A stretch of DNA of 64,000 bases, from positions 1 through 64,000 of the forward strand of contig JAADVB010000051.1 in the NCBI GenBank assembly GCA_023334545.1. Direction: 5' to 3'. Of this stretch, positions 40,093-41,912 are shown piece after piece. Position 1 is the first letter of the stretch. Every line of letters begins with the position of its first letter. A program made the position numbers and the translations under genes. This DNA is from Salisapilia sapeloensis CBS 127946. Taxonomy: Eukaryota > Protista > Oomycota. The notes beneath the pieces are model-generated. The model was not told where the DNA came from. It saw only the letters and a list, made by a program, of their open reading frames with translations, and ran no database searches.

Positions 40093-41912
40093 TCACAGCT
40101 CAGCAAAGTCCGACGTTAGCGCTTGTCGGAGGCGGGCGAGAGGGACAGAGATTGGAGGTAGATCATCCGAAAAAGTATGGCGACTCGTCTTGGGTGGGAA
40201 AAGACCATCGGATAACGACATGTCAATCACTTCTTCTTTCGTCAGACTGTCGCGACCGCATTGAGGCCAGACATCCACGGTGATGCTCTCGTCAGCCAAG
40301 TAGTCGACCATGACCACAGGGACGCACTCGAGTCCGAGCTGTCTACCCACGTGGTAACGATGGTGTCCGTCCAGGATCGCACCGGTGCGTTCATCCACTA
40401 GTAGAGGCTCCATGTACGCATCCCACCGAAGCGTCGCTCGTTTTAATCCATCGACACGATCCCAACTAACTACATGTTCATGTGCCTTGAGCCAACTGAC
40501 TTTCGCCACTTGCACCTTTTGCTTCTTCGGACTACGTTTCGGCGGTGCATCAAAGTGGAACTTGTAAAAGTACGATGTTGGGTCGCAGATGCGTGTCATG
40601 AAGAACTTTTCACGACACTTGGCATCGGAGCTGAGCAAGTCTTCGAATGTTGCGCCACGTTGGCGGCAAAACGATGAGGACGGATCGTTCTCTCGAATGG
40701 CGTTGAAAAAGTCGGAAGGATCGAACGTTGGACGACGGATGACGTCCAAATGTGGACGTAAGTCTTCATTCTCAATCTGACGCAAACGACTGCGGAAGAG
40801 ACCCTTGGTTAGTGATGCAGCAAGGTGCTGAGCGCCGCAGATAATCTTCACAGACACTTCGGTTAGACTCGGTCTACGCTTAAGCTGCTGCGTATCGATC
40901 TCTTCCTCCACGCTACTGGTACTAGATGATCGAGAAAGATGCTCCGTCGTGCCATCGAGTGGAGATGGCGGCTGACGGAGGACAGAGAGGGGGATGGAGA
41001 CTGGCGGAAGGCGTTCGACAAATCGATGCCGACTCGTCTTGGGAGGGAATACCTTGTCAGACATGGCCATTGCAACCACCTCGTCTTTCGTAAGAGAGTC
41101 ACGACCACATCCAGGCCAGACGTCCACCGTGATAGTGTCGTCGTCGAGATAGTCGACCAAGACGGCAGGCACTTGTGATAGATTCAGTTGCAACGCAACG
41201 GTGTACCGGTGGTGGCCATCGAGAATGGCACCGGACTGTCGATCCACGAGCAATGGTTCCGTGTACGCATCCCATGTTAAAGTGGCTCGACGTAGTCCAT
41301 CGACGCGTTCCCAGCTCACAATCTGCTCGTGAGGCTTCAGCCAACGAATATCCACGAGTTGGACTTGAGCTTTCTGTGGACTCAAGTGCTTCGGACCGTC
41401 GTAGTGAAATTTGTAAAAGTAGGACGTCACGTCCGTGACACGTGAGAGGAAAAATTCACTCGTCTCGGCTTTGGCAGACGTTTGATCCGAGATGACCGAG
41501 TCGTCTTGCGTCACGGAGCGCCACGCATCGGCACGGGCTTTCTTCGACTCGCTGATCTCATGATCCAGACTCGAATGCTCATCCTGGCAGACACGCTCTG
41601 CATCCGCGAGGCGTCGAGGAGCGACGTTGTGAAGCATGTCGGCTGCCACGTCGCGACGAGATCCTTTCGGATACATGCGCATGGAGAGCTGTCGAATGAG
41701 CGATCGCTCGGGAAGGTGCTGCACTTGTTCTGGAGACAGAAAGTCGTCCTTGTACCTCTCGGTTAACGCCGGATCCGAGTCTCGCTCGTCTTGGCGTATG
41801 GGTGGCGCCAACACTCTGTCTGAACTATACAATATTCAAGTGTTACTACACATTCCAACGAAGCAGACAGTCTGGAAGCAAGTAGATGGTAGGTGTACCT
41901 TATTGGCGGCAT
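40093..41912 (-). CDS. Protein with two tandem ParB/Srx-fold domains (SerK/SbnI-like)
   Basis: Two copies of WLK(P/A)HE...EPLLVD..(S/T)GAILDGHHRY....L.L..VP...VDYL.D..ITVDVWP.CGRDSLTK.EV..M..SD..FPPKTSRH. The first exon MPPIS from ATG 41912 splices in frame to the 41832 ORF. Confidence 0.85.

What the first reader, a model, noticed from the sequence alone, without database searches (positions are those of the whole stretch)
40093..41912. Tandem prokaryote-type ParB/Srx domains: a candidate eukaryotic free-serine kinase (SerK/SbnI-like)
Seen: two highly similar modules of about 160 aa (about 41452-40972 and 40608-40120). Each has an extra conserved leader FF(L/M)(S/T)R..D.TSYFYKFH(Y/F)D, then WLK(P/A)HE, EPLLVD, LDGHHRY, VDVWP.CGRD and FPPKTSRH. 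Known: the HE plus DG(H/V)HR arrangement marks the ParB/sulfiredoxin fold. Thermococcus SerK and Staphylococcus SbnI use this fold to phosphorylate free L-serine, with a catalytic Glu in the HE motif. The sulfiredoxin Cys (GCHR) is absent here, and no ParB HTH follows. Inference: this is an intron-bearing, internally duplicated, probably prokaryote-derived small-molecule kinase. It could supply O-phosphoserine for cysteine or diaminopropionate synthesis by a route I do not know to be described in oomycetes. Both modules keep all motifs, so both may be active.
Basis: partly seen in the sequence, partly recalled or inferred. Interest (0 to 1): 0.78.

Follow-up and report, generated by a model that had tools for sequence, protein, structure and literature searches.

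The report
Tandem compact SerK-like kinase domains
An expressed, spliced oomycete gene encodes two copies of a stripped-down version of the archaeal free-serine kinase SerK, from an unstudied enzyme family shared with diatoms and the ocean's most abundant planktonic archaea; its substrate is untested, but serine or a similar hydroxy-amino acid is the best guess.

Summary
A minus-strand gene (40093-41912) has one 74-nt intron, shown by transcript contigs. It encodes two modules of about 165 aa that are 65% identical.

Sequence profiles and a confident AlphaFold model both place each module with the free serine kinases SerK and SbnI. The VIA-align structural Z-score is 16-19 for these, against 8.6 or less for sulfiredoxin and ParB. 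The residue that aligns with SerK's catalytic Glu30 is invariant. So are the DGHHR motif and SerK's C-terminal TKEEV...PKT(S/T)RH segment. All 52 tandem oomycete homologues checked keep these in both modules.

The family lacks the roughly 99-residue subdomain found in SerK and SbnI, and it scores far below the SerK equivalog cut-off. It is therefore a compact relative, not a SerK orthologue.

The same module occurs:
- singly in diatoms and pelagophytes;
- as a stand-alone protein of about 137 aa throughout Marine Group II archaea (55-60% identity);
- fused, in three different architectures, to PLP-dependent fold-type-I enzymes.

Bacterial fusions lie in polysaccharide clusters next to PLP decarboxylases. 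One archaeal fusion lies beside a CysM/SbnA-like enzyme. These contexts favour a hydroxy-amino-acid kinase. L-serine is the leading candidate but is unproven.

The parts
41913..42115 (-). 5' UTR. Its minimum extent is 42115; one run's contig continues unspliced to 42474.
   Evidence: Transcript contigs X1 (41899-42115) and X2 (41899-42474).
41899..41912 (-). Exon 1: the ATG plus 11 nt, encoding M-P-P-I and the first two bases of a Ser codon.
   Evidence: Sequence read. The splice joint was seen in two RNA runs.
41825..41898 (-). Intron of 74 nt with GT..AG ends.
   Evidence: Joint 'skips 74, CT..AC on the + strand' in contigs of X1 and X2. Removing it restores the reading frame.
40093..41824 (-). 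Exon 2: the rest of the coding sequence, including the stop at 40093-40095. The spliced protein is predicted to be 581 aa. The joined sequence was not built or searched.
   Evidence: ORF; continuous transcript contigs.
41461..41824 (-). N-terminal region with no recognised domain. ORF aa 41-110 are moderately conserved among oomycetes.
   Evidence: No Pfam match; conservation profile.
40963..41460 (-). Module 1 (ORF aa 125-290). It has an oomycete-specific leader (FFLSR..D.TSYFYKFH) followed by the compact SerK-like core. Key residues are Glu169 in WLKPHE, Asp205 in LDGHHRY, and Lys265..His269 in PPKTSRH.
   Evidence: (SerK model E 7e-14).
40612..40962 (-). Inter-module linker of 117 aa. It contains conserved blocks (RRPSL..VKIICGAQHLA.., FDPSDFFNAIREN..SSFC) but no known domain. 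It is not similar to the N-terminal region.
40096..40611 (-). Module 2 (ORF aa 408-579). It has the leader (FFMTR..D.TSYFYKFH) followed by the compact SerK-like core. Key residues are Glu452 in WLKAHE, Asp488 in LDGHHRY, and Lys548..His552 in PPKTSRH.
   Evidence: (SerK model E 1.3e-10). AlphaFold model with pLDDT about 95 for residues 30-172. Fold matches.

Best explanation
The gene encodes a soluble protein with two tandem catalytic modules. Each module is a compact version of the SerK/SbnI type of ParB/Srx-fold small-molecule kinase.

Inferred mechanism, by homology with SerK:
- The DGHHR loop and neighbouring residues hold the phosphates of a nucleotide donor. Whether the donor is ATP, ADP or CTP is undetermined.
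- The invariant Glu of the (K)(P/A)HE motif deprotonates the substrate hydroxyl.
- The C-terminal TK.EV...PPKTSRH segment completes the substrate pocket.
- The product is an O-phospho compound.

The most likely substrate class is a free hydroxy-amino acid, with L-serine giving O-phospho-L-serine first in line. The phosphate would then act as a leaving group or handle for a PLP-dependent enzyme.

The family lacks the second subdomain that closes the cleft in SerK and SbnI. I infer that the other wall of the active site comes from a partner. That partner would be a second copy in the oomycete tandem (a covalent pseudo-dimer), a homodimer in the archaeal stand-alone proteins, or the fused PLP domain in diatoms and bacteria.

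Shown here: fold, family placement, motif conservation in both modules, transcription and splicing, distribution, and the fusions. Inferred: kinase activity, substrate, nucleotide donor, pseudo-dimer arrangement and physiological role.
For: Family placement:
- NCBIfam's best hit for the whole protein and for each module is SerK (E 3e-22, 7e-14 and 1.3e-10). ParB models score E 0.01 or worse.
- Sequence search of PDB with the protein gives SerK/PF0380 at about 1e-9, matching two stretches (SerK 8-105 and 202-230).
- The family profile A1 gives SerK 2.2e-19, SbnI 4.9e-7, ParB 0.0085 or worse, and no Srx match.
- The AlphaFold model has pLDDT 86. Foldseek gives SerK at 5e-10, with ParB-N at 4e-4 and weaker.
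- VIA-align gives 1vk1 Z 18.8 (135 residues, rmsd 2.1 A, 27% identity), SerK Z 18.4 and SbnI Z 16.5. The next best are Srx at 8.6 and Noc/ParB at 8.4 or less, with only about 85 residues aligned.

Active-site residues:
- The family's invariant Glu aligns with the residue changed in the PDB entries titled E30Q and E30A.
- Invariant across 51 family members are E45, D73, D81-G-H-H84 and Y104. R85, K141 and H145 are at least 90% conserved.
- Both modules keep all of these in 52 of 52 oomycete proteins.

Functional context in relatives:
- The module is fused to a SufS-type class-V PLP enzyme (P0098).
- It is fused to a Pfam-less domain of about 700 aa, at the C-terminal side in diatoms and pelagophytes and at the N-terminal side in bacteria.
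- That domain's model (pLDDT 86, pTM 0.90) matches only PLP fold-type-I enzymes.
- The P0098 gene lies head-to-head with a CGS-like PLP enzyme, a LysA-like decarboxylase and a CysM/SbnA-like PALP-rhodanese protein.
- Bacterial fusions lie in polysaccharide clusters with ATP-grasp ligases. In one of these clusters, in a short metagenome contig that carries a fusion, and beside the module-less Bordetella petrii form, a PF00282 decarboxylase follows directly.
- There is a precedent for this logic. Campylobacter Cj1436 decarboxylates serine phosphate to ethanolamine phosphate, which an ATP-dependent amidoligase then attaches to the capsule (PMC12409886).

Known relatives: the two biochemically characterised enzymes with this core, SerK (PMC5120207) and SbnI, are both L-serine kinases. 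DUF1015 has been proposed as another (PMC13759103).

Expression: spliced transcripts were found in two runs of the same organism, and 95-99% identical contigs in a related one.
Against: - The roughly 99-residue subdomain of SerK (residues 104-202) is absent, and SbnI has a counterpart that is also missing here. The substrate pocket therefore cannot be the same as in the solved enzymes.
- Scores are far below the SerK and SbnI equivalog cut-offs: 79 against 380 bits and 15 against 350 bits.
- In Marine Group II archaea the gene is monocistronic with no serine or cysteine genes nearby.
- One archaeal fusion partner is a GalU-like sugar-1-phosphate nucleotidyltransferase. This would suit a sugar, an amino alcohol or another phospho-acceptor.
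[quoted passage not shown] The nucleotide chemistry of this clade is therefore not settled.
- First-stage notes of this scan (unchecked) report a phosphoserine phosphatase elsewhere in this genome. If that is right, an unregulated serine kinase would form a futile cycle with it.
- The bacterial context evidence comes from members only 30-33% identical to the oomycete modules.
- No enzymatic data exist for any member of this compact family.
Confidence: 0.45

Rival explanations
1. The protein is a kinase of the same mechanistic type, but its substrate is not free L-serine. Candidates are another hydroxy-amino acid or amino alcohol (homoserine, threonine, ethanolamine, serinol), a sugar that is then nucleotide-activated, or a serine carried on a macromolecule such as Ser-tRNA or a protein.
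For: - Loss of the SerK/SbnI lid subdomain leaves an open site that could take larger or different substrates.
- The fusion to a GalU-like nucleotidyltransferase in Marine Group II archaea fits a kinase-then-nucleotidyl-transfer route.
- The module gene is head-to-head with a PolyA_pol/CCA-adding-type nucleotidyltransferase gene in 77 of 77 Marine Group II loci that have upstream DNA.
- A protein-language-model lead (score 0.85, weak) likens the diatom partner domain to SepCysS/SepSecS, which act on phosphoseryl-tRNA.
- D73 is invariant in the family, but the aligned SerK residue is Ala.
Against: - Both characterised relatives use free L-serine.
- The SerK-specific C-terminal motif is retained almost letter for letter (PKTTRH against PPKTSRH).
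- The CysM/SbnA-like neighbour and the PLP-decarboxylase neighbours fit phosphoserine chemistry.
- The whole Marine Group II neighbourhood is syntenic, so the CCA-enzyme pairing may carry no functional meaning.
Confidence: 0.25
2. The protein is not a kinase. The modules would be nucleotide-binding or nucleotide-hydrolysing switch or regulatory domains, in the manner of ParB-CTPase-fold proteins, that control partner enzymes or other proteins.
For: - The ParB-CTPase fold is a versatile NTP-binding module, and a SerK-like archaeal protein bound CTP (PMC12704722).
- The compact module is little more than the nucleotide-binding core plus one helix-loop.
- It occurs fused to enzymes of unrelated chemistry, both PLP enzymes and a nucleotidyltransferase.
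- Some databases label the homologues 'transcriptional regulator'.
Against: - The catalytic-base Glu and the SerK-specific C-terminal motif have no role in ParB clamps, yet they are invariant or nearly so across archaea, bacteria and eukaryotes.
- There is no HTH or DNA-binding domain.
- Structural similarity to the kinases covers the whole module at Z 16-19. Similarity to ParB clamps is Z about 8 over the core only.
Confidence: 0.2
3. The protein is a sulfiredoxin-like repair enzyme, a ParB-type DNA-binding or partition protein, or a ParB-like nuclease.
For: - It shares the fold superfamily.
- There is a sub-threshold Pfam ParB_N hit of 22.2 bits.
- The SerK orthologue PF0380 (1vk1) was once reported as a nuclease (cited in PMC5120207).
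Against: - There is no catalytic Cys (DGHHR, not GCHR) and no HTH.
- The ParB_N score is below the gathering threshold.
- The profile finds Srx not at all, and ParB only at E 0.0085 or worse.
- Fold Z-scores are half those for SerK/SbnI.
Confidence: 0.03

Closest known systems
SerK, the ADP-dependent free L-serine kinase of Thermococcus kodakarensis (TK0378; PDB 5x0b and others; P. furiosus PF0380, 1vk1)
   Same: - ParB/Srx-type core.
- The catalytic Glu in the KPHE motif aligns with Glu30.
- The DGHHR motif, the (V/L)DY..D strand and the C-terminal TKEEV...PKT(T/S)RH segment are shared.
- Z 18-19 with rmsd 2.1-2.3 A over about 137 residues and 25-27% identity.
   Different: - SerK residues 104-202, a separate subdomain, are missing. 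Six residues (x-C-G-R-x-x) replace them.
- The family-specific invariant Asp (LLVD) corresponds to Ala in SerK.
- The score is 79 bits against an equivalog cut-off of 380.
- The module occurs in tandem in a eukaryote, and it comes from mesophiles.
SbnI, the ATP-dependent L-serine kinase and regulator of staphyloferrin B synthesis (PDB 5uje, 5ujd, 6nr6)
   Same: - Same core fold, Z 13.6-16.5 over 136-138 residues.
- The Glu and Asp catalytic positions are conserved. The roles of SbnI Glu20 and Asp58 are from my own recollection of Verstraete et al. 2018, a paper not held in the library.
   Different: - Much weaker sequence match: profile E 4.9e-7, and the NCBIfam model gives 15 bits against a cut-off of 350.
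- SbnI has the extra subdomain and a regulatory C-terminal region.
- SbnI sits in a siderophore operon with SbnA. No such context exists in oomycetes.
DUF1015 / 'SerBK', a proposed bacterial serine kinase (GapMind 2026, PMC13759103)
   Same: It is a remote relative of SbnI proposed to interconvert serine and phosphoserine. It gave a faint Pfam hit to the DGHHR region (E 0.044).
   Different: It is a much larger protein (profile of 325 positions). The similarity here is not significant. Its own biochemistry is unproven.
Sulfiredoxin (Srx)
   Same: Eukaryotic ParB/Srx-fold enzyme that transfers the ATP gamma-phosphate to a substrate oxygen. The core superposes at Z 7-8.6.
   Different: Srx uses a catalytic Cys in GCHR and acts on a protein (peroxiredoxin). 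It has no KPHE Glu and no KTSRH segment. The family profile does not detect it.
ParB/Noc/KorB CTP-dependent DNA clamps
   Same: The N-terminal nucleotide-binding fold is shared, at Z about 7-8.4.
   Different: Here there is no HTH and no dimerisation domain. The GERR arginine box is replaced by DGHHR. There is no parS or ParA context.

Membership tests
SerK (NCBIfam NF053625, ADP-dependent L-serine kinase) | ParB/Srx-type domain with the catalytic base Glu30 in the KPHE motif | tested here: met
   The Glu of WLKPHE and WLKAHE aligns with the position mutated in PDB entries 5x0j (E30Q) and 5x0e (E30A). It is invariant in 51 family members and in both modules of 52 oomycete proteins.
SerK (NCBIfam NF053625, ADP-dependent L-serine kinase) | DGHHR nucleotide/phosphate-binding motif (SerK 69-73) | tested here: met
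   LDGHHRY is present in both modules. D-G-H-H is invariant across the family and R is at least 90% conserved. All five are invariant in both modules of 52 oomycete proteins.
SerK (NCBIfam NF053625, ADP-dependent L-serine kinase) | C-terminal segment TKEEV...PKTTRH (SerK 203-225) packed on the N-domain | tested here: met
   A second aligned stretch covers SerK 202-241. The structural alignment spans SerK 7..242.
SerK (NCBIfam NF053625, ADP-dependent L-serine kinase) | Second subdomain (SerK residues about 104-202) forming the other side of the active-site cleft | tested here: not met
   It is absent. Profile positions 125 and 132 align with SerK residues 103 and 203. Only 135-140 of about 240 SerK residues have a counterpart.
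SerK (NCBIfam NF053625, ADP-dependent L-serine kinase) | Score at or above the curated equivalog cut-off (380 bits) | tested here: not met
   78.8 bits for the whole protein; 51.5 and 40.8 bits for the two modules.
SerK (NCBIfam NF053625, ADP-dependent L-serine kinase) | Phosphorylation of free L-serine by ADP or ATP | not testable with these tools
   This needs an enzyme assay.
SerK (NCBIfam NF053625, ADP-dependent L-serine kinase) | Genomic or functional link to phosphoserine-consuming enzymes (CysK/SbnA type, SerC/SerA) | tested here: inconclusive
   One archaeal lineage has a CysM/SbnA-like PALP-rhodanese neighbour. PLP-enzyme fusions and PLP-decarboxylase neighbours occur in bacteria. Nothing of the kind is seen in Marine Group II loci, and the feature is not applicable to the eukaryotic locus.
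SbnI (NCBIfam NF033589) | Equivalog score of 350 bits or more, plus a regulatory C-terminal region | tested here: not met
   15.3 bits. Only the core fold is shared (Z 16.5).
ParB/Spo0J/Noc CTPase DNA clamps (Pfam PF02195, TIGR00180) | ParB_N at or above the gathering score, the GERR box, and HTH DNA-binding and dimerisation domains | tested here: not met
   ParB_N scores 22.2 bits, below the 26.3 threshold. TIGR00180 scores 15 bits against 58. No further domains are found.
Sulfiredoxin | Catalytic Cys in the (F)GGCHR motif | tested here: not met
   The motif here is DGHHR in both modules. The family profile finds no Srx chain at E of 1 or better.

The most novel reading that the evidence does not exclude
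This is a previously unrecognised minimal free-amino-acid kinase family: the SerK core without its lid. It is near-universal in Marine Group II archaea, was exchanged with marine stramenopiles, and is repeatedly coupled to PLP enzymes. In oomycetes it became a covalent pseudo-dimer. That would give eukaryotes a direct serine-to-phosphoserine (or analogous) step that is absent from textbook eukaryotic metabolism.
Probability: 0.35. Interest if true: 0.78.

Novelty: new variant of a known kind. Interest (0 to 1): 0.62.

Why it matters
Free serine kinases are known only from a few hyperthermophilic archaea and from staphylococcal siderophore synthesis. The discoverers stated that clear homologues were absent from bacteria and eukaryotes (PMC5120207).

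This work shows a compact relative that is:
- conserved and expressed in an oomycete, and present in every major oomycete lineage sampled (many of them crop and animal pathogens; the gene has no animal or plant counterpart in these searches);
- present in diatoms and pelagophytes;
- present in at least 341 prokaryotic species-representative genomes; the 80 best matches listed are all archaeal MAGs, and those named to order or family are Poseidoniales (Marine Group II), the most abundant planktonic archaea of surface oceans.

If it is a hydroxy-amino-acid kinase, it adds an unrecognised step to eukaryotic and marine archaeal amino-acid metabolism. It would also explain a set of orphan PLP-enzyme fusions in polysaccharide gene clusters. 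The claim can be tested directly with simple recombinant assays.

Tried and rejected
- Pfam scans of the N-terminal region, the linker and the partner regions of fusion proteins found nothing.
- Sequence and profile searches of PDB with the roughly 700-aa partner domain found nothing. Only the predicted structure revealed the PLP fold.
- The N-terminal region and the inter-module linker are not related to each other, so the duplicated unit is the module alone.
- Tandem Repeats Finder sees no DNA-level repeat. The 849-nt spacing of the modules exceeds its 500-nt period limit, so this result is uninformative.
- The SbnI paper (PMC5912478) is not held in the library. The Nagata 2017 SerK structure paper was not looked up. 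SerK's serine-contacting residues could therefore not be mapped one by one, and statements about SbnI Glu20/Asp58 and SbnI dimerisation rest on my memory.
- The ESM Atlas search of the module returned only its own unnamed archaeal clusters.
- P0184 (P. oleae, 268 aa) looked like a second paralogue. It carries the inter-module linker and is a partial copy or model of the same tandem gene.
- Literature searches for an oomycete or Marine Group II ParB-like or serine kinase description found none.
- The exhaustive representative search was not run. The word search and family scans already gave hundreds of relatives, and no claim here rests on absence of relatives.
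Full report
**1. What is in the sequence**

On the minus strand, one open reading frame runs from 41832 to the stop at 40093-40095. The first in-frame Met of that frame is only at codon 51. 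An ATG at 41912 lies in another frame. A GT..AG interval of 74 nt (41898-41825) would join it in frame.

Public transcript assemblies confirm this. Contigs of two runs of the same organism, 100% identical to the window, skip exactly 41825-41898 (listed as 'skips 74, CT..AC' on the plus strand). They continue upstream to 42115 and 42474. The intergenic stretch at about 42140-42640 is uncovered in two of the three runs, so these runs behave as RNA. A run from a second, 95-99% identical organism also carries pieces of the coding region.

The gene is therefore transcribed and spliced. The predicted product is 581 aa, which is ORF numbering plus 2. Exon 1 contributes only M-P-P-I and part of a Ser codon.

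**2. The repeat**

Module 1 is ORF aa 125-290 (window 41460-40963). Module 2 is aa 408-579 (window 40611-40096). They are 65% identical over 162 aa without gaps, E 9e-85. The N-terminal 124 aa and the 117-aa linker match no Pfam family and are unrelated to each other. Both contain blocks conserved among oomycetes.

**3. Which family**

Pfam reports only a sub-threshold ParB_N hit (22.2 bits against 26.3). NCBIfam ranks SerK first for the protein and for each module (E 3e-22, 7e-14 and 1.3e-10). ParB and Noc models score E 0.015 or worse, and SbnI scores 0.0096.

Against PDB sequences, the protein hits P. furiosus PF0380 (1vk1) and T. kodakarensis SerK at about 1e-9. The match is in two pieces, SerK 8-105 and SerK 202-230. 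A profile of 51 family members (A1) gives:

| PDB target | E-value |
|---|---|
| SerK (13-103 and 203-241) | 2.2e-19 |
| SbnI | 4.9e-7 |
| Spo0J/ParB | 0.0085-0.02 |
| Noc | 0.036-0.12 |
| Sulfiredoxin | not found |

. In that alignment the family's invariant Glu sits on the residue that is Gln or Ala in the entries titled E30Q and E30A. This is the catalytic base of SerK, an attribution I make from the entry titles and my recollection of Nagata et al. 2017.

An AlphaFold2 model of module 2 built on A1 is confident: mean pLDDT is 86, and about 95 for residues 30-172. Foldseek puts SerK and SbnI first (E 5e-10 to 1e-5). ParB-N follows at 4e-4 and weaker, and Srx at about 1e-2. VIA-align separates the groups clearly:

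| Structure | Z | Residues aligned |
|---|---|---|
| 1vk1 (rmsd 2.1 A, 27% identity) | 18.8 | 135 |
| SerK | 14.9-18.4 | 139-140 |
| SbnI | 13.6-16.5 | 136-138 |
| Srx (best) | 8.6 | about 85 |
| Noc/ParB | 8.4 or less | about 85 |

That criterion is not met. The modules group with the serine kinases.

**4. What differs from SerK and SbnI**

Model residues 21-162 span SerK 7-242, but only about 139 SerK residues have a partner. Profile positions 125 and 132 align with SerK residues 103 and 203. The module is therefore SerK with residues 104-202 replaced by a six-residue turn (x-C-G-R-x-x, with Gly and Arg conserved). SbnI also has an extra part of about 95 residues that the module lacks.

The module scores 79 bits against the SerK equivalog cut-off of 380. 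The family also has its own invariant Asp in LLVD, where SerK has Ala. It is a compact relative of the serine kinases, not an orthologue.

**5. Distribution**

- **Oomycetes.** The tandem architecture is found in Phytophthora, Nothophytophthora, Peronospora, Plasmopara, Bremia, Hyaloperonospora, Pythium, Globisporangium, Lagenidium, Albugo, Aphanomyces, Achlya, Thraustotheca and Saprolegnia (domain map). The best hit is 69% identical, so the window's own genome is not in that database.
- **Diatoms and pelagophytes.** Single modules occur in Coscinodiscus, Eucampia, an MMETSP species whose name is cut off in the output ('Pseud...', P0087), and Pelagophyceae. These proteins are either about 300 aa or about 790-900 aa.
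- **Marine Group II archaea.** The module alone finds hundreds of stand-alone proteins of 132-147 aa at 55-61% identity. A pattern scan of one genome per prokaryotic species found 341 encoding loci. The best 80 are all archaeal MAGs, and those named to order or family are Poseidoniales.

A quick maximum-likelihood tree (148 columns, bacterial long proteins as outgroup) gives three results:
- Oomycete module-1 and module-2 sequences form sister groups within one oomycete clade (SH-aLRT 94).
- Each group contains Saprolegniales, Albugo and Peronosporales. The duplication therefore predates the oomycete crown radiation.
- The eukaryotic clades are nested among archaeal short-protein clades, with only moderate support (80-92).

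This is compatible with an archaeon-to-stramenopile transfer but does not prove its direction.

In 52 of 52 tandem oomycete proteins, both modules keep Glu45, Asp73, DGHHR, Tyr104, Lys125, Lys141 and His145 (module-2 numbering). Both also keep the leader residues F3, R7, D10 and S13 and F15 of the TSYF motif; T12 and Y14 are kept in 51 or 52 of 52. Both copies are under selection of the kind expected for working active sites.

**6. Functional clues from relatives**

*(a) Fusions.*
- Marine Group II proteins of 422 aa carry a GalU-like sugar-1-phosphate nucleotidyltransferase in front of the module.
- P0098 (519 aa, an archaeal-type contig carrying SUI1) carries a SufS-family class-V PLP enzyme in front of the module.
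- The eukaryotic proteins of about 850 aa (module at the C-terminus) and bacterial proteins of about 860 aa (module at the N-terminus) share a partner region of about 700 aa. It matches no Pfam family, but the two versions are homologous (BLASTP E 5e-21).
- That region has invariant SGT..E, DACQ.R and GSKF..GPPF.GA motifs. Its AlphaFold model (pLDDT 86, pTM 0.90) matches at least 500 PDB chains. The 50 best listed are all PLP fold-type-I enzymes: group II decarboxylases, Egt2-type C-S lyases, class-V aminotransferases and threonine aldolase.

The module has thus been joined to PLP-dependent amino-acid enzymes in three different architectures.

*(b) Neighbourhoods.*
- P0098 is head-to-head with a CGS-like PLP protein, a LysA-like PLP decarboxylase, a CysM/CysK/SbnA-like PALP enzyme fused to rhodanese, and a methyltransferase.
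- Bacterial module-PLP genes (Rhodobacteraceae and others) lie in polysaccharide or capsule clusters with Wzx/Wzy and ATP-grasp ligases. The module-less Bordetella petrii form lies beside KpsC/S-type capsule genes.
- A PF00282 PLP decarboxylase follows directly downstream at three loci: the Lutimaribacter cluster, the short metagenome contig that carries P0099, and the module-less Bordetella petrii gene.
- A published precedent for this logic is the Campylobacter jejuni capsule. There, Cj1436 decarboxylates serine phosphate to ethanolamine phosphate, and an ATP-dependent amidoligase attaches it to glucuronate (PMC12409886).

*(c) Marine Group II loci.* The stand-alone gene is monocistronic. 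In 77 of 77 loci with upstream sequence it is head-to-head, within 400 nt, with a PolyA_pol/CCA-adding-type nucleotidyltransferase gene. The whole neighbourhood is syntenic, with GCV_H and an acyl-CoA dehydrogenase in 72-73 loci. The pairing may therefore reflect synteny alone.

**7. Interpretation**

The best-supported reading is a SerK-type phosphotransferase acting on a small hydroxy compound, most probably a hydroxy-amino acid. Three lines of evidence point that way:
- the only characterised enzymes with this core are L-serine kinases;
- the catalytic Glu, DGHHR and the SerK-specific C-terminal motif are invariant or nearly so;
- the module is repeatedly coupled to PLP enzymes, CysM/SbnA-like enzymes and decarboxylases.

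I put about 0.45 on a hydroxy-amino-acid kinase with L-serine the leading substrate, and roughly 0.35-0.4 on serine specifically. I put 0.25 on the same chemistry with a different substrate. The GalU-like fusion, the missing lid and the family-specific Asp keep that option open. I put 0.2 on a non-catalytic nucleotide-binding role and about 0.03 on Srx, ParB or nuclease roles.

The idea that the second module substitutes for the missing SerK lid, as a pseudo-dimer, is my inference and was not modelled.

Nothing found here ties the oomycete gene to cysteine or diaminopropionate synthesis. First-stage notes of this scan mention a phosphoserine phosphatase and a cysteine synthase elsewhere in the genome. 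I did not check them. Ordinary enzymes of that kind do not discriminate between the readings.

**8. Novelty**

Public records call the homologues 'ParB/Sulfiredoxin domain-containing', 'transcriptional regulator' or hypothetical. The SerK discovery paper states that clear-cut homologues are not found in bacteria or eukaryotes (PMC5120207).

The 2025 survey of the ParB-CTPase fold used Pfam ParB_N at its gathering threshold. This protein falls below that threshold in my scan, and most homologues carry no precomputed ParB_N hit. That paper does not mention tandem, oomycete or diatom proteins. Five literature searches found no description of this family.

I class it as a new variant of a known kind: a lid-less SerK-like family, tandem in oomycetes.

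**9. Limits**

- No enzymology exists for any member.
- SerK's ligand-contacting residues could not be mapped, because the structure papers were not available here and model coordinates cannot be inspected.
- The tree is short (148 columns) and was built with the quick method.
- The bacterial context evidence comes from members only 30-33% identical to the oomycete modules.

Noticed in passing
L013-L092 (Marine Group II loci), e.g. L001:6694-8414 and L007:6563-8435: In 77 of 77 Poseidoniales species-representative loci with upstream DNA, the stand-alone module gene is head-to-head (within 400 nt) with a PolyA_pol-family (PF01743, class-II CCA-adding/poly(A) polymerase type) gene. GCV_H and an acyl-CoA dehydrogenase are also syntenic in 72-73 loci.
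   Followed up: partly
L002:1-7926: In one TARA contig, the DNA upstream of the archaeal module gene is replaced by a block of small phage-like genes (Phage_T5_A2, DUF3310, a DNA ligase, PC4). The PolyA_pol gene there is truncated to 177 aa. This looks like a viral or provirus insertion next to the gene.
   Followed up: no
P0099-P0104, P0271-P0384; loci L101, L102, L103: A Pfam-less domain of about 700 aa is widespread in Rhodobacteraceae, Bordetella petrii and other bacteria, and forms the N-terminal part of diatom and pelagophyte fusion proteins. It is predicted with high confidence to be a PLP fold-type-I enzyme. It sits in capsule or exopolysaccharide clusters with ATP-grasp ligases. A PF00282 decarboxylase followed directly downstream in three of the four contexts examined.
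   Followed up: partly
L093:4681-11560: An archaeal-type contig has a SufS-like-plus-module fusion gene. It is divergent from a putative operon of a CGS-like PLP protein, a LysA-like decarboxylase, a CysM/SbnA-like PALP enzyme fused to rhodanese, and a methyltransferase. This may be a sulfur-amino-acid-derived metabolite cluster.
   Followed up: partly
window 38568-40034 (+) and 40093 (-): A CNNM/CBS-domain (DUF21-type) transporter gene converges on the ParB-fold gene, with only 58 nt between the two stop codons. Unstranded transcript assemblies merge the two genes into one contig, so their 3' UTRs must overlap.
   Followed up: partly
window 41913-42474: The transcript contig of run X2 runs unspliced from 41899 to 42474. 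X1 and X3 stop near 42101-42115.
   Followed up: partly
window 42677-43756 (-): A signal peptide peptidase gene (Peptidase_A22B, E 2e-80) lies upstream. It is covered by separate transcript contigs in all four runs.
   Followed up: no
window 40612-40962 (-), ORF aa 319-323: The conserved inter-module linker begins with RRPSL, a basophilic (PKA/AGC-type) phosphorylation consensus. It is followed by conserved blocks VKIICGAQHLA and FDPSDFFNAIREN..SSFC of unknown role.
   Followed up: no
P0184 (Phytophthora oleae, 268 aa): This is a second, shorter annotated protein in P. oleae. It holds part of module 1 with an internal deletion, plus the linker. It is probably a partial duplicate or a mis-modelled copy of the tandem gene rather than a distinct paralogue.
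   Followed up: partly
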